Both the position numbers and the translations under genes were made by a program. A model generated the notes under the pieces. It did no database searches. It was given only the letters and a program-made list of their open reading frames with translations, and was not told the DNA's origin. 64,000 nt of DNA from Gekko japonicus (lineage: Eukaryota), in the NCBI RefSeq assembly GCF_001447785.1, contig NW_015167537.1:572016-636015 (forward strand). Reading direction: 5' to 3'. Positions 22,710-63,054 of this stretch are shown one piece after another. Numbering within the stretch: position 1 is the first letter of the stretch; each line of letters opens with the position of its first letter.

Positions 22710-23130
22710 TAGGTATAAAAACTGTAATTAAAAATGGTATTTCTAGGGAATTGTTAAAATGAAGAGTTTGTACCTAGCAGTAGCAATGGCATAGGACTGC
22801 CAGCAACCTAAAAGGGAAAATGTCCTGTCCTTTTAATAGAGGCTTATTTATCAGGTAATGTGATGTTTCTCAATTTACCTTTTAACAGAGGCTTCAGTAT
22901 ATGCAAAACAGAAATATTCAAGAGGGCATTTTTATAAAGAGATTAGAACTGTAGTATGATGGAACAGCTCAGAGGGACACTTTTTATAAGGGAACATATG
23001 GGGGCCTACAACTATAATGGGGGGGGGGAAATCCCTCTGCTCACTCTCCAGTTTGTAGAAATGTGTGTTTTGTGACTGCATGGCCCCAATCCACAGATAA
23101 GTATTCACAGATTGGACCATGTGACTATTA

Positions 23131-23268
23131 CCGTGTTTCCCCGAAAATAAGACACTGTCTTATATTTATTTTTTTCACAAGAAGACACACTAGGGCTTAT
23201 ACCACAAATGCATAGAAATCCTGCTAGGGTTTATTTTTGGGGTAGGTCTTATTTTCGGGGAAACAGGG
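23131..23268. mobile_element. Tc1/mariner-superfamily MITE (Tc2/pogo-like termini)
   Basis: TIRs CCGTGTTTCCCCGAAAATAAGAC / GTCTTATTTTCGGGGAAACAGG with TA on both sides. Confidence 0.85.
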
Positions 23269-24129
23269 TAGTTATACTGATAGAATTGTAGTCTTTTTAA
23301 GTGTTTATTGTATGTATCACTTTGCTTTTACTGCATTGTTTTCTAGCTTTGTAACCCACTTTTTTCTTCATGATATGCTCTCTATTTCTTAGTTTTTTGT
23401 TCACGTTGTTTTCTAATTCTGCAATCCTAGTCCTAGTGCATTGTTCATTGAAAGTTTTGCGCTGATTGTATTGCTTTTTATATTTTGAGATCTTGAGTCT
23501 CACTGAGAAAGGTGGGCTATAAATAAAGAAAATAAATAAATTTAAGCAGGAGACCTGTGATAACATTGGGGAGTTTCACATTCTTTGTCCTATCCCTTAC
23601 TGGGGCCTTCTACTTACCTGCCACCTGCCTGTCTGCAGCTCCACTGTCGTCAGCTTCTTGGCTCACATGGGTGTCTATGTGTGCAGTGTAATTGACTCCA
23701 GTGCCTCTAGATATCCCTTCCTCCTCCTTTTCTCCCTGCCTGTCCTCCTGCCTGCCTAACTCATGCTACATCCCCCCTTCTTCCGTTCTGTCTGCATACC
23801 TCCCTCCCTGCCTGATTCATGCAGTGGTGTTCTGGCTCCCTTTGCCCACCTGCTTTCCTACCCAGCTCAGGAAGTAGCAGCTCCTGCTCCCTCCTCCTCC
23901 ACCCGCTTCCAGGCTGTGGGGACGCTCCTATATATTGTTTGGTCAGGCAGAGACAGTGCTCTTCTGTTTGGGGGATTCAAAACCCCTCTGCCTTTCTCTC
24001 TCTCTCTCTCTATCTTTTTAACTTTTCACATTTTTCTACAAACCTGGAGCGGCCCCCAGGTCTACAGAAGAATACCCACTATCCGAACCTGGGCCCATTC
24101 TCTGGTTTTTCTATCCACATGGGGGCCAG

Positions 24130-39400: not shown

Positions 39401-40218
39401 AACATTCTCCAAAAGTCGGGCCCTTTATTCTGTGTGTCTGAAATTTTGCAGCATTCTAGGGGTATCCTCAGGGAATACTACAATCCCTCTGAGTTTTGTC
39501 CAGCTTGAATGAAAAACTGCAAGGGTACAGATCCAAGAAAAGGGGGTGAGGTCTTCCATTGAAATCAGTGGGCAATAATAATGAGAGAATAATGAAAATG
39601 AAACAAAATAAAAAAGGAAAATGACAAACATGAAAATGAAACAAAGATAACAAAAGAAACAATAACAAAACCAAACTATACAAAATGAACTCCCATGCAC
39701 AGATTTAGAGCCTACCAAAAGGATAGAAATATCCTGATTTGGTGTGTTATGGCACCTTAATGGCTAACACATTTATTGTGGCATGACTTTCAGATCGGAG
39801 TGATTCATTAGATTGCATATCAAGTTTATGGCATCACAAATGTGCCTTCTAAATCCAAAGCAAAACTCAGTCACTTTTAATTATCAGTAAATATGACTTC
39901 TGCAGGGAAAAGTATAAACCTACCAAGATAAATAAATGGTCACAAGATTGTGCTGAGTAAATAAATAGATTTTAAGGCTCAATCTATTTCAATTTCACCC
40001 TTGGGACTGGCTGTTCTCAAAAAAAGTTCTTTGAACAAATGGAATGTGACATTTCTTCAGAATTAATAGTGGCTGGGCAAGTTGAAAGTGAAAAGTTAAC
40101 CCTTCCAGAGTATGGAAGCTTTGCTTTTAGAACATTCCATAGTGAAATAAAGTATTCCTTTGTTTATAAAGTGGGGTAATAAATATGTCATGTCTGCTTG
40201 GTCAACTGAGGTGCAAAT

Positions 40219-40508
40219 GAGAACAAATTTTGCACTACTACCCACTAATATTAGGAGGGATAGCTAGGAAGCTACCAATTAAACATTGGTGGGTAGTAGT
40301 GCAAAATTTGTTCTCTATTAACTATGAAGACAGGATGTATTTTGGGTTTAAACCTCAAGTTTGTTTTCACAAACCTTAACTTCCAGACAAAACTTATTAG
40401 GAGGAATAGCTAGGAAGCTAACAATTAAACAAGTTTTGTCTGGAAGTTAAGGTTTGTGAAAACAAACTTGAGGTTTAAACCCAAAATACATCCTGTCTCC
40501 ATAGTTAA
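40219..40508. repeat. Twin inverted repeat with a duplicated 35-nt spacer
   Basis: Stem 1: 40219-40249/40285-40315; stem 2: 40318-40395/40431-40508; spacers 40250-40284 and 40396-40430 identical at 33 of 35 positions. Confidence 0.95.
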
Positions 40509-40548
40509 AAGAGACAGATGCAAATGGAAGATACTGATCTGTTCCCCC

Positions 40549-40981
40549 TAGGGTTGCCAGGTCCTTCCTCGTCCCCAGTGGGGGACTTTGGGAGGCATTT
40601 CTGGAGGAGGCAGGCCACAGGGACATCCCAAACACGAGGAGTTTATGCAAAAGTGACATCATCATGTTGGGAACCAGCGCCCTGGCGCCTGAACTCCAAG
40701 TGGAGAATTCGCTGCTTGGAATTCAGGCATGTGGCCAGCAGATGTCACCCCTCTCCCTCCCCTCCTGCAAGATTTAAAGGCCCCTCTAACTGGTCAGCAG
40801 GCCATGTGCTCCCACTGATCTGCTGGACTGCCCTTTAAATCTTGCAGGAGGGGAGGGAGGGGGTGGCCGCTGGTGGTCACTGTTGGGATCAGGGTTAGGG
40901 GCAGGACTTCCCCAGCTGGCCAGTGGTGGGCAGGAGCCTGCCAATTCAGAGGATCCCCCCCCCCCAGGACTGGCATCCCTA
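40549..40981. mobile_element. Non-autonomous hAT element (TAGGGTTGCCAG termini)
   Basis: TAGGGTTGCCAG...CTGGCATCCCTA; internal inverted repeat CCCTCCCTCCTGCAAGATTTAAAGGGC / GCCCTTTAAATCTTGCAGGAGGGAGGG. Confidence 0.8.
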
Positions 40982-41068
40982 GCCCCCCCCCATTTCCATA
41001 TTGGAAATTGTTCTGTTTTCTTAACAATTTAAGAGACCTGTAACTGAAGTTTCACACCACTCCTTTTG

Positions 41069-41318
41069 TAGGGAAGCCAGCCTCCAAGTGGGACCTGGGG
41101 ATCCCCCAGAATTACAGTTTATCTCCAGGCAATGGAGATCAGTTCCCCTGGAGAAAATGAATGCTTTGGAGGTTGGACTCTATGGCATTGTACCCCACTG
41201 AGGTCCTTGTTCTCCCTAGGCTTCATCCTCAAATCTCCAGGAGTTTCTCAACCTGGATCTGGCAACCCTGCCTCCCCTTCTCTCGCTGGTGGCGTGGGGG
41301 GCGGGGGCTGGCAACCCT
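41069..41318 (+). mobile_element. hAT MITE (TAGGGTTGCCA family)
   Basis: Similar to 26613 and 45778 copies; ends TGGCAACCCTG. Confidence 0.75.
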
Positions 41319-41713
41319 GTTCCCCAGAATTCTCTTACCTCTGCACTGGTGAATTCTATTATAGCTTATACTGATGCTGACATTTGAAAGTAAATCCATT
41401 TTTTTCTGGCAAAGCTTTTAATTATTAGAAAATTCGATAGTTACTTAATTTACACCTTCCCTTGCTATGGCTCTCTCATGTACCAACCCATGGGTCTACA
41501 CCCAAAAAAGTTGGTTAGGAAGCCACTGAAAAGTGAGTCATGGGCCAGCCCTCCCTAATGGCCGCTTCTGCCCTTTCCATTGCTCTCTTTTGTATTTTGG
41601 AAGCCAACCTCTGAAACTGGAAACAGCCTCTTCCATGTCATACATTAGTTGGGTTTTTTTTCTTCTTTACTGCATATACATGTTTGTCAAATATAACATG
41701 TCCTGATGGATGA

Positions 41714-43253
41714 TAAGCAGTGGGGTACCGCAGGGATCAGTACTTGGTCTGATGCTTTTTAACTTGTTTATTAATGATTTGGAGTTGAGAGTAAGCAGTG
41801 AAGGGGGCTAAATTTGCAGATGACACAAAGTTGTTCAGGGTGTTGACAACCAGGGAGGATTGTGAGACACTCCAAAGGGATCTGTTGAGGATGGGTCAAG
41901 TTGGCAAATGGGGTTCAATGTGGCCAAGTGCAAAGTGATGCACATTGGAGCAAAAAATCCTAACTATAAATACATGTTGATGGGGTCTGAACTGATAGAG
42001 ACTGACCAAGAGAGAGATCTTGGAGTTGTAGTACACAGTGTGTGACTGCAATTAAAAAGGCCAACACTATGCTGGGGATTATTAGGAAGGGAACTGAAAA
42101 TAAATCAGCCAGTATCATAATGCCCCTGTATATATCGATGGTATGTCCTCATTTGGAGTACTGTGTACAGTTCTGGTCACCACACCTCAAAAAGGATATT
42201 ATAGCATTGGAAAAAGTGCAGAAAAGGGCAACTAGGGCCCCTGCCACACGGCAGGGGAAAAGGCGCTTGAAGGCGCGGCTTTTAAAAGCCGCGCCAACGT
42301 TGACACGGCGCGGCGGGATCTCACGGATCCCCCGGCCGCGCCGCCGTTTCTCCCCGGCGCGATCAAACGCCGGGGAGAAAACACGGCCCTAACCGGGGGC
42401 CGGCTGAACTGCGCATGTCTGAGCATGCGCAGTTCGTCTCCGGCCCGGGGTTGTGCCGGCGCGTCCTTGCGCCGGCGATCAAACGGCCGGGAAGAGGCGC
42501 CGCATCCACTTGAACCACCGAGATAGGTGGTTCAGTTTGAGGCGCGGTTTCCAAGAATAGAGACAGTTCGGGGACGGAATCACGGCGCTTCCCAGATGTT
42601 GTGGTGTGATCGCGCCGGTTTGAACCGCCCCCGAACTGTCCCGCTCCCGGACCAAATAGGTGAGTGTGAACGGGACCTAGAATGATAAAAGGGTTGGAGC
42701 ACTTTCCCTATGAAGAAAGGCTAAAGCACTTGGGGCTCTTTAGCTTGGAGAAACGACGGCTGAGGGGTGACATGATTGAGGTTTATAAGATTATGCATGG
42801 GATAGAGCAGGTCGAGAAAGAAGTACTTTACTCCCTTTCTCACAATATAAGAACTCGTGGGCACTCCATGGAATTGCTGAGCGGTCGGGTTAGAACAGAT
42901 GAAAGGAAGTACTTCTTCACCCAAAGAGTGATTAACACATAGAATTCACTGCCACAGGAGGTGGTGGCAGCTACAAGCATGGACAGCTTCAAGAGGGAAC
43001 TGGATAAACATATGGAGAAGAGGTCCATCAGTGGCTATTAGTCACAAGGTATAGATAGGAACTTCTAGGCTGGGGCAGGTGATGGACTGTATTCTTGGTG
43101 CTTGGGGGAGGCAACAGAGGGAGGGCTCCTAGTGTCCTGGCCCCACTGCTTGACCTCCTGATGGCACCTGGTATTTTTGGCCACTGTGTGACAGAGTGTT
43201 GGACTAGATGGGCCATTGGCCTGATCCAACACTGGCTTCTCTTATGTTCTTAT
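41714..43253 (+). mobile_element. CR1 LINE, 5'-truncated (end of RT domain to 3' UTR), interrupted by a MITE
   Basis: SGVPQGSVLG, KFADDTKL, KANTMLGIIRKG...PHLEYCVQFWSPHLKKDIIALEKVQKRATR and MIKGLEHFPYEERLKHLGLFSLEKRRLRGDMIEVYK; tail TTCTCTTATGTTCTTAT. Confidence 0.95.
42236..42677. mobile_element. GC/CpG-rich MITE, PIF/Harbinger-like, 3-bp TSD TAG
   Basis: Removing it restores CR1 ...GCAACTAGAATGATA (ATRMI); imperfect TIRs GGCCCCTGCCACAC / GTGTGAACGGGACC. Confidence 0.78.
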
Positions 43254-54299: not shown

Positions 54300-55330
54300 A
54301 CTTAAGAGGCTGGCACTGCCTGGCTGGGTAGCAATGGCCACATCACCTCATAGCTGAAGGCATCCAAGATAACATCACCTCATAACTGGAGGCATCCAAG
54401 ATCACACCCAGACTCTTGGTGGTGCTGGTGGGAGTTGGCACCCCAAATCTGTCCCCCCTACCCAGCCACAGAACCTCAGCCAACTCTTTCTCAACTATCC
54501 CGCCACAGCCTCCAGCCCCCGGGCAGATTTTCTGGGGCGGTATCTGGCTGGCTGCCCATCCACAGATATAGCTGGGTGTTATCAGCGTACTGGTAACATC
54601 CCAGCCCGAAAGTCCATGCCAGTTGGTGAGGGGGTGTATGTAAATATTGAACAACATTGAAGAGAGGATTGCCCCCTGAGGAACCCAACATACTAGAGGG
54701 TTCCTAGTTGACACCCTCTCTCCCAGTGCCACCCTCTGTCCCCCACTTTGGAGGAATGAGGTGAGTCACTTCAGGAATACCCCACAAACTCCTATGTTGG
54801 AGAGGCAGTGGGTCAAAAGATCGTGATCAACCATGTCAAACGCTGCTGTAAGTTCAAGCAGCAGCAGCACTGACCCGCCTCGATCCAACTGTTTGCAGAG
54901 ATCGTCAGTGAGGGCGACCAGTGCCATCTCTGTCCCAAGGCTGGGGCAGAAGTCAGACTGGAATGGGTTCAGTGCTAATGTATCTTCCAGGAAATTCTGG
55001 AGCTGTTCCACCACTGCTCTCTCAATTACCTTACCCAGAAATGGAACATTCAAAAATGGGTGGTAATTGGAAGGATCCATAGGATCCAAAGTTGATTTCT
55101 TTAAGAGCGGTACAGCCACCGCCTCTTTTAATCCCTCTGGATAGCTCCTTGAATCCAGGGACAGGTTGATAACGTCTACCGGGGCAGACCACCTCAGGGG
55201 CCAACCGCCCCCACTTCTCTGTCTTTGGCATGCCACTGCAGCGGTGGGGGAGGCTTTTCATCCCTTTCCTCTGGCTCCATGTGAGCTTCCTAGGGCACAT
55301 AGATTCAGAAAAAGGGAGCGAAAGCCTCTC
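54300..55330 (-). mobile_element. L2 LINE ORF2 (RT) fragment, decayed
   Basis: LKEAVAVPLLKKSTLDPMDPSNYHPFLNVPFLGKVIERAV...TEMALVALTDD...AAFDMVDH; VPQGAILS; QYADNTQLY. Confidence 0.9.
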
Positions 55331-56774: not shown

Positions 56775-58499
56775 ATGTCGGATAGGGAAGTCGCTGACAA
56801 TTTCTTCTCAGAAGACGAAACTGGGGAAGACTTCCTTTCAGCTCAGCGCGCCTCTGTTACAGCCGCAGCTATGTCCTCTGCTCCTGCTGCCGTGGCGAGC
56901 TCTTCCGCACCAAAAGACACAGGCGCCAAAAAGCGTCCCCACTCTCCCAGCATGTTGCGGGCGCCATTTTGAATCAAGCGGCTAAACTCGCTCACCCCGA
57001 AGAAGGGGTAGGAGGCTGCGGGGCAGCTTTCGCTGCTACCATAAGCCAAGGCTCAAACCCTGAGGAAGGACTGGCGGTCCCAAGTTTCCAGGAACCGGCG
57101 GATCGCGGCAATGGCGCTCCTTCTGCCGGTCTACTTGTGAGTAACCCCGGTCAGGGCTGTAATCCTCTGTTAATGCCAGATGTAATGTGGTTCTTTAGAG
57201 AAATGGTGAGAGAAAAGTTAGCCACCCTGCGCAGGGACTCCCAGGGGAATAGTTTCCAAGAGCCCCTCCCTACCCAGCCCAGCCACTGCCCCCAAGGGGA
57301 GTTTGGTCACGACTGCCCAGAGGAAGACAGACCCCGCTGGCCAACAAAGGCAGCTAGAAAGAGCCACCATTGCTCCTTGAGTGCGGATCCCCAGTGGGAC
57401 CTTTCTCAGATGGAGGAGAGTGAAATAGGAGGACCGGAGAAAGGTGAGTTCCTCTCTGATGAGGAGGAAGAAGAAGAAGTGGAAGTTCCTGACCGTTCCA
57501 TGCACTTTTTTAAACCTGAGGACTATATGTACTTGCTCAAAAAGACCATGTCCACCTTAGAGCTTATCCCTAGACTGAAAGCAGATGACACAGCCAATGA
57601 TGAATCTGCAGATGGGTTGAGACCCAGGGGGAGTAAAGATTATTTTCCTAGAACCCCAGGGTTTGAAAAAGTTTTCCCTTTTCCAGAATTCCTAGAGAAG
57701 CAATTGGTTAAGGAATGGACTAAGCCCATGGCAAACAAGCACTGTCCTCCTAATATTAAAAAATTGTATGCATTGCCTAATTTTACAGAAGCTCTTGCAG
57801 GTCCCCCCAGTGGATGCTCCGATAACCGCACTCCAGACCTCAGGCCTGCTGTCTGAAGAGGGAGAACGTATGGTGCATGATATTCTGGATAAGAAGGCTG
57901 AATTTGCCTTACATAAGGCCCACGAAGCCACAGCTATGGCCATCAGAACGAAAGCCACAGCCACGGTTGTAGCTCAGGCCTCCATAGCCTGGTCCAAAAA
58001 GATGACTCAACTTATCCCGGACTCTAATAAACGCTTGGCTGAAGGGGCGAACAGGCTCCTTCAAGCTTCTTTTTCTGCTGATGCCACACTTGATGCTATG
58101 ATATTCTCTTCCAGAGCTTTGGCTTCCACGGTGGCAGCTAGGAGAACCTTGTGGCTATGTGCCTTGCAAGCAGACCTTCATGCCAAAGGAATCGTTACGG
58201 CATACCCCTTCCAGGGCAACCGCCTCTTTGGTGATTCCTTAGATAAAATCCTCATGGAGACAAAGGATAAAAAGAAAGCCTTGCCACGCTTGCTGGGCAG
58301 AGGAGACAGACGAGGACTTGGCAACTTTTCCTTTCAAGGTTCATGGTCTTCCTACAGATTTGACAGAGATGGGAGACGTCCCTTCTTGGGGACCTCAAGA
58401 CAGAATTTCAGACACAATCCTTTCCACAACAGACCAGGCAGCTCCTTCCCTCCAAGAGACAACAAGTCCGGGAAAGGAAACAAGTCCTCCACCACATGA
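56775..58499 (+). pseudogene. DIRS gag (LAP2alpha-like domain), frameshifted across three ORFs
   Basis: ORFs 56775-56972, 56969-57856, 57768-58499; LQVPPVDAPITAL...DKKAEFAL...ARRTLWL...PFQGNRLFGDSLD typical of vertebrate DIRS ORF1. Confidence 0.8.
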
Positions 58500-60375
58500 C
58501 TACGAATCAGTGCCCGTGGGAGGACATCTGCTCATATTTCATCGGACTTGGGTAGAGTCCAACGCAGACGCCTGGTCCAGGGAAATCGCGTCAAATGGAT
58601 ACTCCATCGAATTTCTGAGCAAACCCCCAGACCGCTACATCCTCTCTCCACTGATAAAAGACGAAGGCAAGCTACAAAGAACTCTGGATGCTGTACATCA
58701 TCTGGCCAGCATTCTAGCCATTGAGCCTGTTCCATTCGATCAAAGGGGACAGGGTATCTATTCCATCTTTTTCACCGTTCCCAAAAGGAACGGCAGCTGG
58801 AGAGCCATATTGAACTTTAAATTCCTAAACAAATTCGTACGCTTACGCCGTTTTTGCATGGAAACACTTCGCTCGATAGCAGAGGCTCTTCAACTGGGTG
58901 AATTCCTGATGTCTGTCGATCTACAGGAGGCGTACCTACACATACCCATCTTTGCCGGGCACAGATGTTTCCTGCGGTTCTGTGTTCAAGGACAGCACTG
59001 GCAGTTCCAGGCCCTTCCGTTCGGTCTCTCTACTGCACCCAGGGTCTTTTCCAAGATGTTAATCCATCCAGTTGTCCTGCTGAGGGAACAAGGTGTCCAT
59101 GTCCACCCATATTTGGACGACCTCGTGATCCACTCCGCCTCTCACCTCAAGTTGATTCAGGATACAGAGGCCACTGTACGTTGCCTTCAGATGCATGGTT
59201 TCCTTGTGGATGTCCAGAAGAGCTGCCTTGTCCCGTCTCAAACACTAGAACACCTAGGAGTGATCTTGGATACATCGCAAAACAAGATGCTTCCACCCAA
59301 ACCCAAGGCAAAGACAATATGCAACGTTTGCAAACAGATCTTCAGGAGCAGGCGTTCCTCACTCATGACCCTGGCCAGACTGATGGGTCTCTTAGTCTCT
59401 TGCATTGATACGGTTCTATGGGCTCGTCTCCACTCAAGGCCTTTGCAACAACTTCTGCGACCTTTTCAACACAAGATCTTGTGTCGGGAAGACATCCCCA
59501 TAGGCCTTCCTGCTGCCGTAAGTTACAGGCGCCTGGTGGACCAAAATGTCAAACCTACTAAGAGGCCGCGCATACTTCGTGACACACTGGGAGCAGATAG
59601 TCACAGACGCCAGTCTGGTGGGCTGGGGTGCGGTCCACCTCAATGTTCCCTCTCAGGGCCTGTGGTCCACTCATGAGAACAAACTACTGATCAACGTTCT
59701 GGAGCTGAGGGCTGTCAGGCTGGCTCTACTTCAATTCCATCACCAAGTCTCAGGCCTCCACGTGTTGATCCGGATGGACAACATAGCCACCAAGTCCTAT
59801 ATCAACAACCAGGGCGGCTCCAAATCAACCCGCCTACACAAGGAAGCGACGCTCCTCCTCATGTGGGCAGAACACAACCTCACCTCTATCAAGGCAGAAT
59901 ACATCAGGGGCTCTCTGAATACCCAGGCCGACTGGCTCAGCCGCTGCCAATTACAGGAGGTGGAGTGGTCTCTGCGGAGAGACCTCTTTCTGGTGATAGT
60001 GGAGAACTTCGGTCTGCCAGATGTGGACCTACTTGCCTCCCTGCTCAACTTCCAGGTTCCCCGGTACTTCACTCAGTTTTATCACTGAGAGGCAGAAGCG
60101 ATGGCTGCTCTGACATCCCCCTGGCCACCAGGTCTGATGTTCGCATTTCCTCCCACTCCAAACATTCCGAGATTCCTCAGGAAACTCAAGGAGCAGAAGG
60201 TGGAGGCCATTCTGGTGGCTCCCTATTGGCCATGAAGACCATGGTTCTCAGAGATCCAATGCCTGTCAATCCGTTCTTATCTCTCTCTTCCGACAGCCCC
60301 CGACATGCTACTACAAGGCCCAGTCTGGCATCTGGATCTGGGCTGGCTTCATCTGACCGCATGGCGATTGAGCGG
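58318..60375 (+). pseudogene. DIRS pol: reverse transcriptase, RNase H, Dam-like methyltransferase domain; frameshift and stops
   Basis: DLQEAYLHIP, LPFGLSTAPRVF, YLDD; TDASLVGWGA, INVLELRAV, DNIAT, NTQADWLSR; PDVDLLAS, FAFPP, VAPYWP; frameshift near 59520, TGA at 60086-60088. Confidence 0.9.
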
Positions 60376-61359
60376 CACGGGCTCCTCAAGCTCGACTACC
60401 CTGAGAAAGTAACCAACATGATCATGGCGGCTAGACGACATTCTACATGTCGCATCTACAATACCACCTGGAAAACCTTTGTGCGGTGGGCCAGAAGGAA
60501 GTTGGTGGACCCCTTGAAGCCTCGCCTCAGGAATATACTCACTTTCCTACAAGACGGTCACGACTCAGGACTTAAGTCATCTACCTTGCAGAGACAGGTG
60601 ATGGCTTTGTCTACGGTTCTTCCCCTCTTCAAAGGTTGGAGTTTATCTAGACACCCACACGTCAAACGCTTTCTGAAGGGAGCGTCGTCTCAGGACCCGC
60701 CTGTCGTCCATAGGTTTCCTACTTGGAGACTAAACATGGTTCTCAACACATTGACCAAGCCCCCTTTTGAACCAATTACAGATATTTCTTTGAAGTGGCT
60801 TCGAATGAAAACCTTGTTCTTAGTGGCGGTAACGACTGCTCGGCGGGTGTCTGAACTGGGAGCTCTGTCAGCTAGTCCACGCTTTTGCATCTTCCATAAA
60901 GATAAAGTCGTTCTGATTCCTGACCCCACCTTTCAGCCTAAGGTCAATACCAGGTTTCACAGATCTCAGGAGATCTGTCTCCCCTCCTTCTGCCTAAACC
61001 CGACTCGCACATAGGAGCATATATGGCATTTGCTGGATGTCCGCCACACCCTGAAAGTGTTCCTACATCGAACCATGTCCTTTCGAAAATCTGCATCTCT
61101 ATTCGTTTCAATTTCTCCCCCTAATAAGGGCTTCAAGATGTCCAGTTCCACGATCAGCTCTACTCTCAAACTGTGCATCATTGAGGCCTACAGGGCACAG
61201 GAGTTGGTTCCTCCGACGGGCATCACCACATACTCCATCCATAGTGCGGCCACATGGTCTTCTGTCGCTACCTTCACAAGCCATTACAAGATTGATGTTT
61301 TTGATTCAGCTGATGCAGCCTTCGGCAGACGAGTCCTTCAGCAAGTCCTGACAGACTAG
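60361..61359 (+). pseudogene. DIRS tyrosine recombinase, disrupted
   Basis: STCRIYNTTWKTF, KTLFLVAVTTARRVSEL, AATWSSVATFTSHY; in-frame TAG at 61012-61014; HxxR motif reads YSIH. Confidence 0.88.
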
Positions 61360-63054
61360 ACGATGACCCACCCAGGATTCATGGACACTGCTCTAGGAGG
61401 TCCCAGCAAGATGTCCTCCTCTCAGAGGGAGAATGGACCCTTAGTACTTACCCATGAAGGGTCCTTCTCCTCTGAGATGAAGGAGGACATCTTGGGCCCT
61501 CCCAAGTCATTGTCTTCTATGTCTTCTTTACCTTCTTTATCTTCATTTATCTCCTTGCATATGCCTTATCTATACCTGTGTGACACACTTAATCCTTCCT
61601 GTTCTCTTTGCTACATTGCTGCACGAGTTACGGTGTTGATTTTTTTTACAGTTATGTAACCAGTTTACTGCTTTTTGGAGTTCCTACCTGAGTTGATGGG
61701 CATGTCACACCGAGAGGACAGGAAGTGAAGTTTGGTTCCTGCCTCCCTAAGGATAGGGTGGGAAACATTCAGCAAGATGTCCTCCTTCATCTCAGAGGAG
61801 AAGGACCCTTCACGGGTAAGAATCAATGGTCCATTTTTTGTTACTCCCTAAAGTCTGAAAGGAGTTAGAGTTTACATGGCCTTGTTAGTCATAGTTTAGA
61901 AATGGCCTCTAACTAGTCCTTTAAAATAACTGGCACTGCACATGTTAATCCATCAGTTTTTGAATGTAACTTCAAGAGATGGATGTGCTTGTGTTCTTCA
62001 CAGCTCAGAATGCTCAGAGCTCCCACAGTACCTCAAAAACCAGGTGGGACAGTGCCTTTCACAAGGTTCATCTTCAAGTCATGTGCAGTTATCATGCAAA
62101 AGGTAATTAACAATACAACCATAAACAGAAACATACCTTTCTAAATTCGTTGAAGTCCATGGGTTTAGAAGGGTACAAATGGGTACAACTCTGCTTAGGA
62201 TTCCACTGTAAGTGATGTGAATGCAACCAGCCCTAGGTTTTGTTCAAATAGCTCCTCCATTTTACAGACAGTCACCCTGAGTTCACTAGAAGCAAATAAG
62301 CCTGAACATGCAAAGGGAGGCAGTGTTGAGTTCATGATTACAGAGGCTTGAATGCTCCAGACATTTTCATTTGGGAAGTTTGATTCAGGTTTTCTGGAGT
62401 TGGTCTGAGACAAATTTAAATTATACTTTGGCAAAAGGAATTTAGCTTTTGCATTCTGTGTGACAGTAGCGATGCTCACACAGGGTAGCACTAGTGGGTG
62501 ACAGGCACAGAAGGTACTTTCTGTGTTATATTTGAAAAACATCTTTCTTGTGGTGAAGCAATTAGGCAGTGGCCAGACTGGCAGTTTTGCACGATCTGCG
62601 GCTGTGATTTGTTTCAGAGGGGGATGCAGTCAGTGGTTAATCTGGCACTTCCTGTAGGGGTGTGTGTGTGTGAGTGCGCACAAAAACTTGTAAGAGAGAA
62701 TCTTAAATTTAATTAGTCTGCATAAAAGTGTCATGATGACAATAGCCTTTTGACTTCTTATGGGGGCTCCTCCCGTTTCAAATTGCTCCAAAATGGTGAC
62801 TTTACCCTATCCAATTACTGAAGCATGGATTTGGATGTAACCCTCTATATGCATAAAATATCACTGGAATTATGTGAACATCAAATGACTTTATTTTAAC
62901 CAAAAGCTGCATTTTTTTCATTCTCCTGTTAAATTATTTGTCAAAGATAGATGTATGACTATTGGCATACACTGCATACTAAATAGGGTGATGATCAACT
63001 TATGATGCATCTTTTATATGGATAATATTTTCTACTGGCTTTATATACTAGTAA

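What the first reader, a model, noticed from the sequence alone, without database searches (positions are those of the whole stretch)
40219..40508. Twin hairpins with unrelated stems but the same 35-nt loop (A-L-A'-C'-L-C)
Seen: a 31-bp stem (30/31 matched) and a 78-bp stem (77/78 matched), 2 nt apart, each closing the loop ATTAGGAGG(G/A)ATAGCTAGGAAGCTA(C/A)CAATTAAAC. It parses as an ancestral A-L-C in which L was duplicated like a long TSD and the insert consists only of inverted copies of both flanks. Inference: a staggered break with about 35-nt 3' overhangs in which both ends folded back, primed on their own strand and were then joined (double snap-back, polymerase theta-like). This is neither a transposon nor a standard inverted triplication. 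It creates in one step a long near-perfect dsRNA stem in the pre-mRNA (possible ADAR/Drosha/Dicer substrate) and a cruciform-prone site. Alternatively L is a tiny mobile unit that generates inverted flanks.
Basis: partly seen in the sequence, partly recalled or inferred. Interest (0 to 1): 0.8.

Follow-up and report, generated by a model that had tools for sequence, protein, structure and literature searches.

The report
Twin fold-back hairpins sharing one loop
Two adjacent near-perfect hairpins with the same 37-base loop are really present in this lizard-type genome and look like the scar of one fold-back DNA-synthesis accident, but whether it was built from the site's own flanks or arrived as an insertion between 8-base duplicated ends remains open.

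Summary
40219-40514 tiles exactly as A(30)-L(37)-A'(30)-C'(83)-L(37)-C(83). There are no filler bases, and A' and C' overlap by 4 nt (TCTC). Only 5 differences occur in about 150 duplicated positions. Nothing comparable exists elsewhere in the 64 kb. Contigs from two runs of the same species reproduce the second loop, its arms and the right flank exactly, so for hairpin 2 an assembly artefact is unlikely. Hairpin 1 and the central joint were not independently covered.

The unit is single-copy. It has no terminal inverted repeats, no hammerhead motif, no Rfam family and no donor in the window. The geometry fits one event: two snap-back syntheses, each primed by the last 4 nt of L on its first 4 nt, joined by a 4-nt microhomology.

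An exact 8-bp direct repeat (TGCAAATG) brackets the unit (empirical p about 0.006). The only relative with the left flank loses similarity at about 40200 and shows no A, L or C. I slightly favour an insertion or filler event with an 8-bp target duplication (0.42) over an in-situ double snap-back (0.30).

Other first-stage notes report TSD-flanked hairpin insertions elsewhere in this genome; these are unchecked. This is a new variant of a known kind, of moderate interest.

The parts
40212..40219 (+). Left copy of the exact 8-bp direct repeat TGCAAATG (candidate target-site duplication). Its last G is also the first base of arm A.
   Evidence: The motif is not enriched in the window (5 found, 5.05 expected). 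Two 24-nt boundary windows at this spacing share an 8-mer at only 0.58% of positions in the window.
40219..40248 (+). A: outer arm of hairpin 1 (30 nt).
   Evidence: It is the reverse complement of 40286-40315 with 1 mismatch (40246/40288).
40249..40285 (+). L1: 37-nt loop copy 1. It has an imperfect terminal 4-nt inverted repeat (TATT/AACA) and an inner 5-7 bp hairpin (TAGCT-AGGA-AGCTA).
40286..40315 (+). A': inverted copy of A (30 nt).
40312..40315 (+). TCTC: 4 nt shared by the end of A' and the start of C' (microhomology at the central joint; GAGA at the start of A and the end of C).
40312..40394 (+). C': inverted copy of C (83 nt).
   Evidence: There are 2 mismatches, both in the 16 nt furthest from the loop.
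40395..40431 (+). L2: 37-nt loop copy 2. It differs from L1 at 40405 and 40421.
   Evidence: Exact in contigs of X1 and X2 (records 1 and 9).
40432..40514 (+). C: outer arm of hairpin 2 (83 nt).
   Evidence: Exact in contigs of X1 and X2 that run on into the right flank (records 2 and 10).
40515..40518 (+). CAGA: 4 nt between arm C and the right 8-bp repeat, belonging to no arm.
40519..40526 (+). Right copy of the 8-bp direct repeat TGCAAATG.

Best explanation
This is a real, single-copy, lineage-specific compound fold-back, made in one event by DNA synthesis that turned back on itself twice.

How it was built: two 3' ends, one per strand, each ended in L. Each folded back so that the last 4 nt of L (AACA on the top strand, AATA on the bottom) paired with the first 4 nt of L. 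This left a 29-nt loop. Each end was then extended along its own strand, by 30 nt to make A' and by 83 nt to make C' on the top strand. The two new 3' ends then annealed through a 4-nt microhomology (TCTC/GAGA) and were sealed. This part is inferred from the anatomy, and I hold it at about 0.75.

Where it happened: I slightly favour that all 299 bp (40220-40518) are new DNA laid down between the two copies of an 8-bp duplication of the target TGCAAATG. On this reading it is an insertion or filler event at a staggered or re-entered break. The polymerase would be a repair polymerase or a retroelement reverse transcriptase that self-primes. A and C would then never have been the chromosomal flanks. 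The template of A-L-C is unknown.

No function is implied. On either strand a transcript would carry a long duplex of 83-87 bp (68 bp perfect).
For: - Exact tiling without filler, 4-nt overlap at the joint, L's terminal 4-nt inverted repeat directly abutting both arms, and 5 differences in about 150 duplicated positions spread over both arms and the loop, consistent with one age.
- A single event is favoured because the two inverted copies tile the 109-nt inner segment exactly (30+83-4). Two independent events would not be expected to do this.
- Real DNA, at least for hairpin 2: exact contigs in X1 and X2, and the copies differ by substitutions, not indels.
- Insertion reading: an exact 8-bp direct repeat sits at 40212-40219 and 40519-40526 with unrelated sequence on both outer sides. 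The empirical frequency of such a coincidence is 0.0058, and the motif is not enriched.
- Organism C's contigs match the left flank 39750-40200, then one 353-nt contig runs on for 247 nt unlike anything in 39600-41000, and nothing from that run is laid on 40211-40539.
- Organism B has depth only in the last bin before the neighbouring repeat (40493-40539, mean 3.6) and none on 40211-40492.
- Published precedent for self-priming, inverted head-to-head copies and 8-10 bp duplications in insertions made by Penelope-type reverse transcriptases (PMC3846280; PMC8557442).
- Published precedent for snap-back priming plus microhomology joining (PMC5728401).
Against: - No donor of A, L or C was found. 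There is none in the 64-kb window.
- In X1 the depth over 40399-40492 is fully accounted for by the locus's own contigs, so no second copy at 85% or more was laid.
- G+C of A-L-C (0.35) equals that of the adjacent left flank (0.35). This fits a local origin.
- There are no terminal inverted repeats, no tail, no hammerhead or other element hallmark.
- Organism C's match ends at 40200, not at 40219 as a clean empty site would predict. That contig is only 86% alike and starts at a graph branch, so it may not be a clean ortholog.
- The 8-mer was noticed post hoc.
- A template with L at the 5' end of both strands is contrived for a reverse-transcription route.
Confidence: 0.42

Rival explanations
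1. One reading: built in situ. The ancestral locus was flank-A-L-C-flank. A break left L as a 3' single strand on both ends. Both ends snapped back on L's own 4-nt inverted repeat, copied A and C, and were joined by the GAGA/TCTC microhomology (SD-MMEJ / polymerase-theta type).
For: It shares the exact tiling, primer repeat and microhomology and needs no outside template. No donor copy was seen anywhere. The G+C of A-L-C is identical to the left flank. All steps are described for snap-back SD-MMEJ, though over shorter lengths (PMC5728401).
Against: - The bracketing exact 8-bp direct repeat would be a coincidence (about 0.6%).
- No A-L-C was seen in organisms B or C (weak evidence).
- Two fully complementary 37-nt overhangs should re-anneal rather than each use a 3-of-4 bp fold-back.
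- Synthesis tracts of 30 and 83 nt and a 29-nt loop exceed what the cited assays report (hairpins within 30 nt of the break).
Confidence: 0.3
2. In-situ replication error: serial template switching at a stalled fork. The nascent strand copies A-L, folds back to copy A, jumps to the other template at the GAGA at the end of C, copies C backwards, then returns at the start of L. This needs three switches, or two successive template-switch mutations.
For: Template switching is documented to make perfect hairpin stems of tens of bases in one event (10.1101/2023.04.19.537475; PMC5453318). The joints have 1-4 nt microhomologies. L contains its own small hairpin that could stall synthesis.
Against: It needs three coordinated switches. 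A single switch-and-return of the four-point model cannot give two direct L copies. Two independent events would not tile the inner 109 nt exactly. It has the same problems as the in-situ model with the 8-bp repeat and the relatives.
Confidence: 0.12
3. A member of a mobile hairpin family. Either it is a non-autonomous Penelope-like or other retroelement insertion (an inverted 5'-truncated copy next to a full copy, twice), or L is a tiny mobile unit that makes inverted flank copies.
For: The 8-bp flanking duplication. The head-to-head shape and a 37-nt piece of the size of the 30-40 bp Penelope 'tail' (PMC8557442; PMC3846280). Unchecked first-stage notes report TSD-flanked long-hairpin insertions elsewhere in this genome.
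Against: Depth is single-copy and no variant copies appear in two whole-genome contig sets. L, A and C are unique in 64 kb. There is no hammerhead or any Rfam family at gathering score. There are no terminal inverted repeats. L is absent from the three public collections scanned (these are not vertebrate collections).
Confidence: 0.08
4. An assembly or library artefact, for example a read that ran round a hairpin-capped library molecule.
For: The unit is formally one turn plus 4 nt of a 292-nt dumbbell circle (109-bp stem, the same loop at both ends). This is the shape of a read around a double-hairpin-adapter molecule. Hairpin 1 and the central joint lack independent contigs.
Against: Exact short-read-type contigs in two runs carry L2, both arm bases and the copy-specific mismatches 40499 and 40509, and run into the flank. 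The copies differ by 5 substitutions and no indels. From my own recall (no tool comparison was run), L does not resemble the SMRTbell adapter. The unit is embedded in unique flanks.
Confidence: 0.03

Closest known systems
[quoted passage not shown]
   Same: A 3' end anneals to a short inverted primer repeat on its own strand and copies that strand. The nascent end then finds a microhomology on the other side. The product contains new inverted repeats. All three sequence signatures are present here.
   Different: Here both ends snapped back. The loop is 29-37 nt, the tracts are 30 and 83 nt rather than a few to about 30 nt, and the loop sequence is present on both ends. The pre-event allele is not shown.
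Template-switch mutations that create hairpins (four-point model; PMC5453318, 10.1101/2023.04.19.537475)
   Same: One-step creation of perfect reverse-complement stems of tens of bases from unstructured sequence. The result is a miRNA-like hairpin.
   Different: A single switch-and-return cannot produce two hairpins with a directly repeated loop. At least three switches would be needed.
Penelope-like element insertions (PMC8557442, PMC3846280)
   Same: Head-to-head inverted copies with palindromic junctions ascribed to self-priming, duplications of 8-10 bp, a 30-40 bp extra piece, and occasional mobilisation of unrelated sequence.
   Different: No pseudo-LTR, no hammerhead ribozyme, no RT/EN remnant and no other copies. 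The 37-nt piece sits in the loops, not at one end.
ODIRA hairpin-capped ('dog-bone') intermediates and inverted triplications (PMC10766183, PMC4689423)
   Same: The unit can be written as a linearised dumbbell: a duplex closed at both ends by loops.
   Different: ODIRA gives X-X'-X triplications of kilobases around an origin, with two different loops. Here there is no triplication and both loops are the same sequence in the same sense.
hAT-type MITEs (8-bp target duplication)
   Same: Exact 8-bp flanking direct repeat; small size; strong fold-back potential.
   Different: No terminal inverted repeats (only TTTT matches between the two ends) and single copy.

Membership tests
Snap-back SD-MMEJ / TMEJ templated insertion | Inverted primer repeats at the base of the fold-back, with the break-proximal one at the 3' end | tested here: met
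   L starts with TATT and ends with AACA (3 of 4 pair; on the other strand a G-T wobble). The arms start at the very next base on both hairpins.
Snap-back SD-MMEJ / TMEJ templated insertion | Inserted bases are an inverted copy of the adjacent same-strand sequence, with no untemplated filler | tested here: met
   The 109 nt between the L copies equal rc(A)+rc(C) minus a 4-nt overlap, with 3 mismatches.
Snap-back SD-MMEJ / TMEJ templated insertion | Microhomology at the final joint | tested here: met
   TCTC is shared by the end of A' and the start of C'.
Snap-back SD-MMEJ / TMEJ templated insertion | A pre-event allele that contains the templates (A-L-C) at the same site | tested here: inconclusive
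   Organism C's contig stops matching at about 40200 and nothing is laid on 40211-40539. Organism B shows nothing on 40211-40492. The tool warns that holes prove nothing, and the C contig is only 86% alike.
Snap-back SD-MMEJ / TMEJ templated insertion | Dependence on polymerase theta | not testable with these tools
   Needs genetics.
Template-switch mutation (four-point model) | One switch and one return explain the whole change | tested here: not met
   The order +A +L -A -C +L +C needs three novel joints (reasoning).
Cut-and-paste MITE (hAT-like) | 8-bp target-site duplication | tested here: met
   TGCAAATG at 40212-40219 and 40519-40526.
Cut-and-paste MITE (hAT-like) | Terminal inverted repeats | tested here: not met
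   The first 20 nt against the reverse complement of the last 20 nt of 40220-40518 agree only in a TTTT run (sequence).
Cut-and-paste MITE (hAT-like) | Multiple copies in the genome | tested here: not met
   Unique in the window. Depth in X1 and X2 is explained by the locus's own contigs, whereas the neighbouring repeat reaches depths of 10^4-10^5.
Penelope-like element insertion | Pseudo-LTR with hammerhead ribozyme, or RT/GIY-YIG remnants | tested here: not met
   No hammerhead or other family even at E up to 10 apart from generic long-hairpin miRNA models far below threshold. ORFs across the unit are 31-72 aa and palindrome-derived.
Penelope-like element insertion | Inverted 5'-truncated copy head-to-head with a fuller copy, flanked by a duplication | tested here: inconclusive
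   Each hairpin has that shape (X'-L-X) and the unit has an 8-bp flanking repeat. The same shape follows from any snap-back.
miRNA / hairpin-RNA gene | Match to a curated family, or evidence of transcription and processing | tested here: not met
   The best Rfam hits (MIR8007 70.8 bits against a 195 gathering score, and others) are all below threshold. Expression was not tested.
ODIRA inverted triplication | X-X'-X arrangement of one segment | tested here: not met
   Every segment is present twice, not three times, and L is never inverted.

The most novel reading that the evidence does not exclude
The 296 bp are one full turn (plus 4 nt) of a 292-nt dumbbell-shaped circular or hairpin-capped nucleic acid: a 109-bp stem with the same 37-nt loop at both ends. 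It would have been copied by a self-priming or strand-displacing reverse transcriptase or polymerase and inserted with an 8-bp target duplication. This locus would then be one member of a recurrent class of TSD-flanked, donor-less 'foreign-looking' hairpin insertions that other first-stage notes report in this lizard genome. That would point to an undescribed route by which snap-back or dumbbell molecules enter a vertebrate germ line.
Probability: 0.1. Interest if true: 0.75.

Novelty: new variant of a known kind. Interest (0 to 1): 0.42.

Why it matters
If the in-situ reading is right, this is a clean germ-line fossil of a double snap-back repair. Its tracts are several times longer than those seen in reporter assays. 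It would show that one repair accident can create a duplex of 83-87 bp (68 bp perfect) and a 30-bp hairpin, both potential substrates for RNA editing, Dicer or cruciform formation.

If the insertion reading is right, it adds to hints that this genome accumulates TSD-flanked hairpin insertions with no donor, whose source enzyme and template are unknown.

Either way it is a single non-coding locus with no evidence of function. Its value is as a mechanistic example and as a search pattern (X-L-X'-Y'-L-Y with a flanking-duplication check).

Tried and rejected
- Other copies of L, A and C in the window with up to 3 mismatches: none.
- Sensitive blastn of the unit and of both flanks against the rest of the window: only chance 12-15-mers.
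- Local alignment of the flanks against the unit on both strands: within the shuffle range.
- L searched in the metagenome, viral and prokaryote contig collections: no match. The predicted empty-site junction searched in metagenome contigs: no match. These collections are not vertebrate, so the blanks say little.
- Rfam at gathering score: nothing. At E up to 10: only generic long-hairpin miRNA models far below threshold and no hammerhead.
- The look-up of encoding contigs was tried for ORFs across the junctions, to fetch independent contigs.
- Exact look-up of three flank/junction ORFs in the protein collection: not present. I therefore did not spend the costly protein searches, because non-coding ORFs of this genome are evidently not indexed.
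- hAT/MITE reading: rejected for lack of terminal inverted repeats and of copies.
- ODIRA triplication: rejected on copy number.
- Two independent template-switch events: rejected because of the exact tiling.
- The 11-nt resemblance of the A/L border to 28S rRNA and to the geminivirus-type nonanucleotide was from memory only. It is at chance level and was dropped.

Full report
**What is there.** The region reads as two adjacent stem-loops.
- The repeat finder gives arms 40219-40252/40282-40315 (34 nt, 94%) and 40312-40398/40428-40514 (87 nt, 97%), each with 29 nt between the arms. It also gives a 37-nt direct repeat at 40249-40285 / 40395-40431 with two differences.
- Extending base by base and checking a tiling gives A 40219-40248, L1 40249-40285, A' 40286-40315, C' 40312-40394, L2 40395-40431 and C 40432-40514.
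- A' is the reverse complement of A with one mismatch (40246/40288).
- C' is the reverse complement of C with two mismatches (40499/40327 and 40509/40317). Both lie in the 16 nt furthest from the loop.
- L1 and L2 differ at 40259/40405 and 40275/40421.
- The 109 nt between the two L copies are exactly 30+83-4, so there is no filler. A' and C' share TCTC, because A begins and C ends with GAGA.
- L begins with TATT and ends with AACA. This imperfect 4-nt inverted repeat directly abuts the arms in both hairpins. L also holds a small inner hairpin.
- Folded as DNA the stretch reaches -124 kcal/mol against -29.7 +/- 3.5 for shuffles.

**Is it more than chance, and is it real?**
- A, L and C occur only at these places in the 64 kb, with zero expected.
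- No other long near-perfect short-loop hairpin exists in the window outside obvious repeats.
- Twenty of the listed public runs hold part of the stretch. I laid four of them.
- Two runs with the same species label (X1, X2) contain contigs that match 40366-40460, 40431-40539 and 40469-40578 without any difference. The 95-nt piece is exactly what a k=31 graph yields for a loop flanked by a palindromic arm. The others carry the copy-specific bases 40499 and 40509 into the unique right flank.
- In X1 the bin depths over 40399-40492 are fully explained by these contigs. No second copy at 85% or more was laid, so the unit is single-copy.
- The neighbouring repeat from 40549 reaches summed depths of 10^4-10^5.
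- The copies differ by substitutions only. For hairpin 2 an assembly or library artefact is therefore very unlikely.
- Caveat: neither X1 nor X2 had any contig laid on 39929-40327. Hairpin 1 and the central joint therefore rest on the assembly alone. The tool warns that such holes prove nothing, and that the best holders may be the sample the assembly came from.

**What it is not.**
- No Rfam family reaches its gathering score in the window.
- With permissive thresholds, only generic long-hairpin miRNA models appear, far below threshold, and no hammerhead.
- The ends of the unit share no terminal inverted repeat (sequence).
- ORFs across it are short and palindrome-derived.
- There is no donor for A, L or C in the window, and the flanks are not part of a repeat there.
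- L is absent from the metagenome, viral and prokaryote contig collections. That says little for a vertebrate.

**How it was most likely built.** The exact tiling argues for one event. Two independent inverted duplications would not meet within 4 nt. All three signatures of snap-back synthesis followed by microhomology joining are present, as defined for SD-MMEJ (PMC5728401):
- a 3'-terminal primer repeat (AACA, or AATA on the other strand) facing its partner at the other end of L;
- templated inverted copies that start at the next base;
- a 4-nt microhomology where the two nascent ends meet.

Template switching at replication forks is also documented to create perfect stems of tens of bases in one step. 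A single switch-and-return, however, cannot give two direct copies of L; three switches would be needed. I hold the core statement, one event with two fold-back syntheses closed by microhomology, at about 0.75.

Three things speak against taking this as shown:
- An exact 8-bp direct repeat, TGCAAATG, sits at 40212-40219 and 40519-40526, with unrelated sequence outside it. This is the picture of a target-site duplication around a 299-bp insert. Sliding the same test along the window, boundary windows at this spacing share an 8-mer at 0.58% of positions. The motif is not enriched. I noticed it post hoc.
- The only relative with usable contigs on the left flank (organism C) matches 39750-40122 at about 95%. 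A 353-nt contig then matches only 40093-40200 and runs on for 247 nt unlike anything in 39600-41000. Nothing of that run is laid on 40211-40539. Organism B shows depth only in the last bin before the neighbouring repeat. This is not the predicted A-L-C. The evidence is thin, though: the contig is 86% alike, begins at a graph branch, stops 19 nt before A rather than at the 8-mer, and holes prove nothing.
- Two fully complementary 37-nt overhangs should simply re-anneal.

Three things favour a local origin:
- No donor copy is seen.
- The G+C of A-L-C equals that of the adjacent flank.
- An insertion route needs a template with L at the 5' end of both strands, which is contrived.

Weighing these, I put insertion or filler with an 8-bp duplication at 0.42, in-situ double snap-back at 0.30, in-situ serial template switching at 0.12, a mobile hairpin family at 0.08 and artefact at 0.03.

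**An equivalent description.** The unit is one turn plus 4 nt of a 292-nt dumbbell: a 109-bp stem with the same loop at both ends in the same sense. This is mathematically the same as the tiling and is not extra evidence. It does show that several starting molecules give the same product: A-L-C, a fragment L-A'C'-L, or a hairpin-capped or circular molecule.

**Leads from earlier notes.** Unchecked first-stage notes on this genome mention the following:
- a recurring class of TSD-flanked long-hairpin insertions with Penelope-like hallmarks;
- a TSD-flanked giant hairpin whose loop was copied from nearby DNA;
- a foreign-looking snap-back insertion;
- an rRNA fragment inside a fold-back.

Penelope-type elements are documented to leave head-to-head inverted copies with palindromic junctions ascribed to self-priming, 8-10 bp duplications and a 30-40 bp extra piece, and to mobilise unrelated sequence. 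I tested the hallmarks that can be tested here. The hammerhead, pseudo-LTR, RT remnants and copy-number tests are not met. I therefore do not file the unit as such an element; the resemblance is one of mechanism only.

**Limits.**
- Three junction or flank ORFs are not in the protein collection. The costly protein searches were therefore not used.
No N was touched.

**Verdict.** This is a new variant of a known kind of event, with no evidence of function. Interest is about 0.4.

Noticed in passing
window 40549-41269 (possibly to 41320): A high-copy MITE-like repeat starts 30 nt right of the unit. Its terminal inverted repeat is AGGGTTGCCAGGTCC / GGATCTGGCAACCCT, and it has an internal 49-nt inverted repeat at 40749-40863. 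Summed contig depths reach 10^4-10^5 in organisms A and B, and hundreds of contigs end at 40548/40549. It is far rarer in organism C. TTCCCC occurs on both sides if the right end is taken at 41320.
   Followed up: partly
window 40259/40275 versus 40405/40421: The only two differences between the loop copies fall on the two positions that pair with each other (G:C) in L1's inner hairpin. In L2 both are A. The chance of hitting the partner is about 1 in 36. This may be a quasi-palindrome correction or coincidence.
   Followed up: partly
window 40126-40152: Organism C differs from the window at 8 positions within 27 nt (including TT>GG), inside an otherwise about 95% similar flank. This is a multinucleotide patch of the kind template switching produces, or else a paralogous graph path.
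   Followed up: no
window 56969-61014 (+): Overlapping long ORFs with a LAP2alpha-like domain (E 5.5e-12) and reverse transcriptase RVT_1 (E 1.3e-15). This is a retroelement, possibly of the DIRS/Ngaro kind noted elsewhere in this genome. A weaker RVT_1 fragment lies at 54769-55236 (-).
   Followed up: partly
window 41700-42000: By eye, the translated sequence carries an 'FADDTKL'-type motif as in CR1/L2-type LINE reverse transcriptases. This was not checked with a tool.
   Followed up: no
window 39585-39700: An A-rich low-complexity stretch with a 23-nt direct repeat (39585-39607 / 39623-39645). It draws hundreds to thousands of summed depth in all four runs and limits alignment of relatives further left.
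   Followed up: no
window 61432-61494 / 61773-61835 and 23129-23153 / 23246-23270: Two further inverted-repeat pairs: 63-nt arms at 92% with a 278-nt spacer, and 25-nt arms at 96% with a 92-nt spacer. Both look like MITE ends.
   Followed up: no
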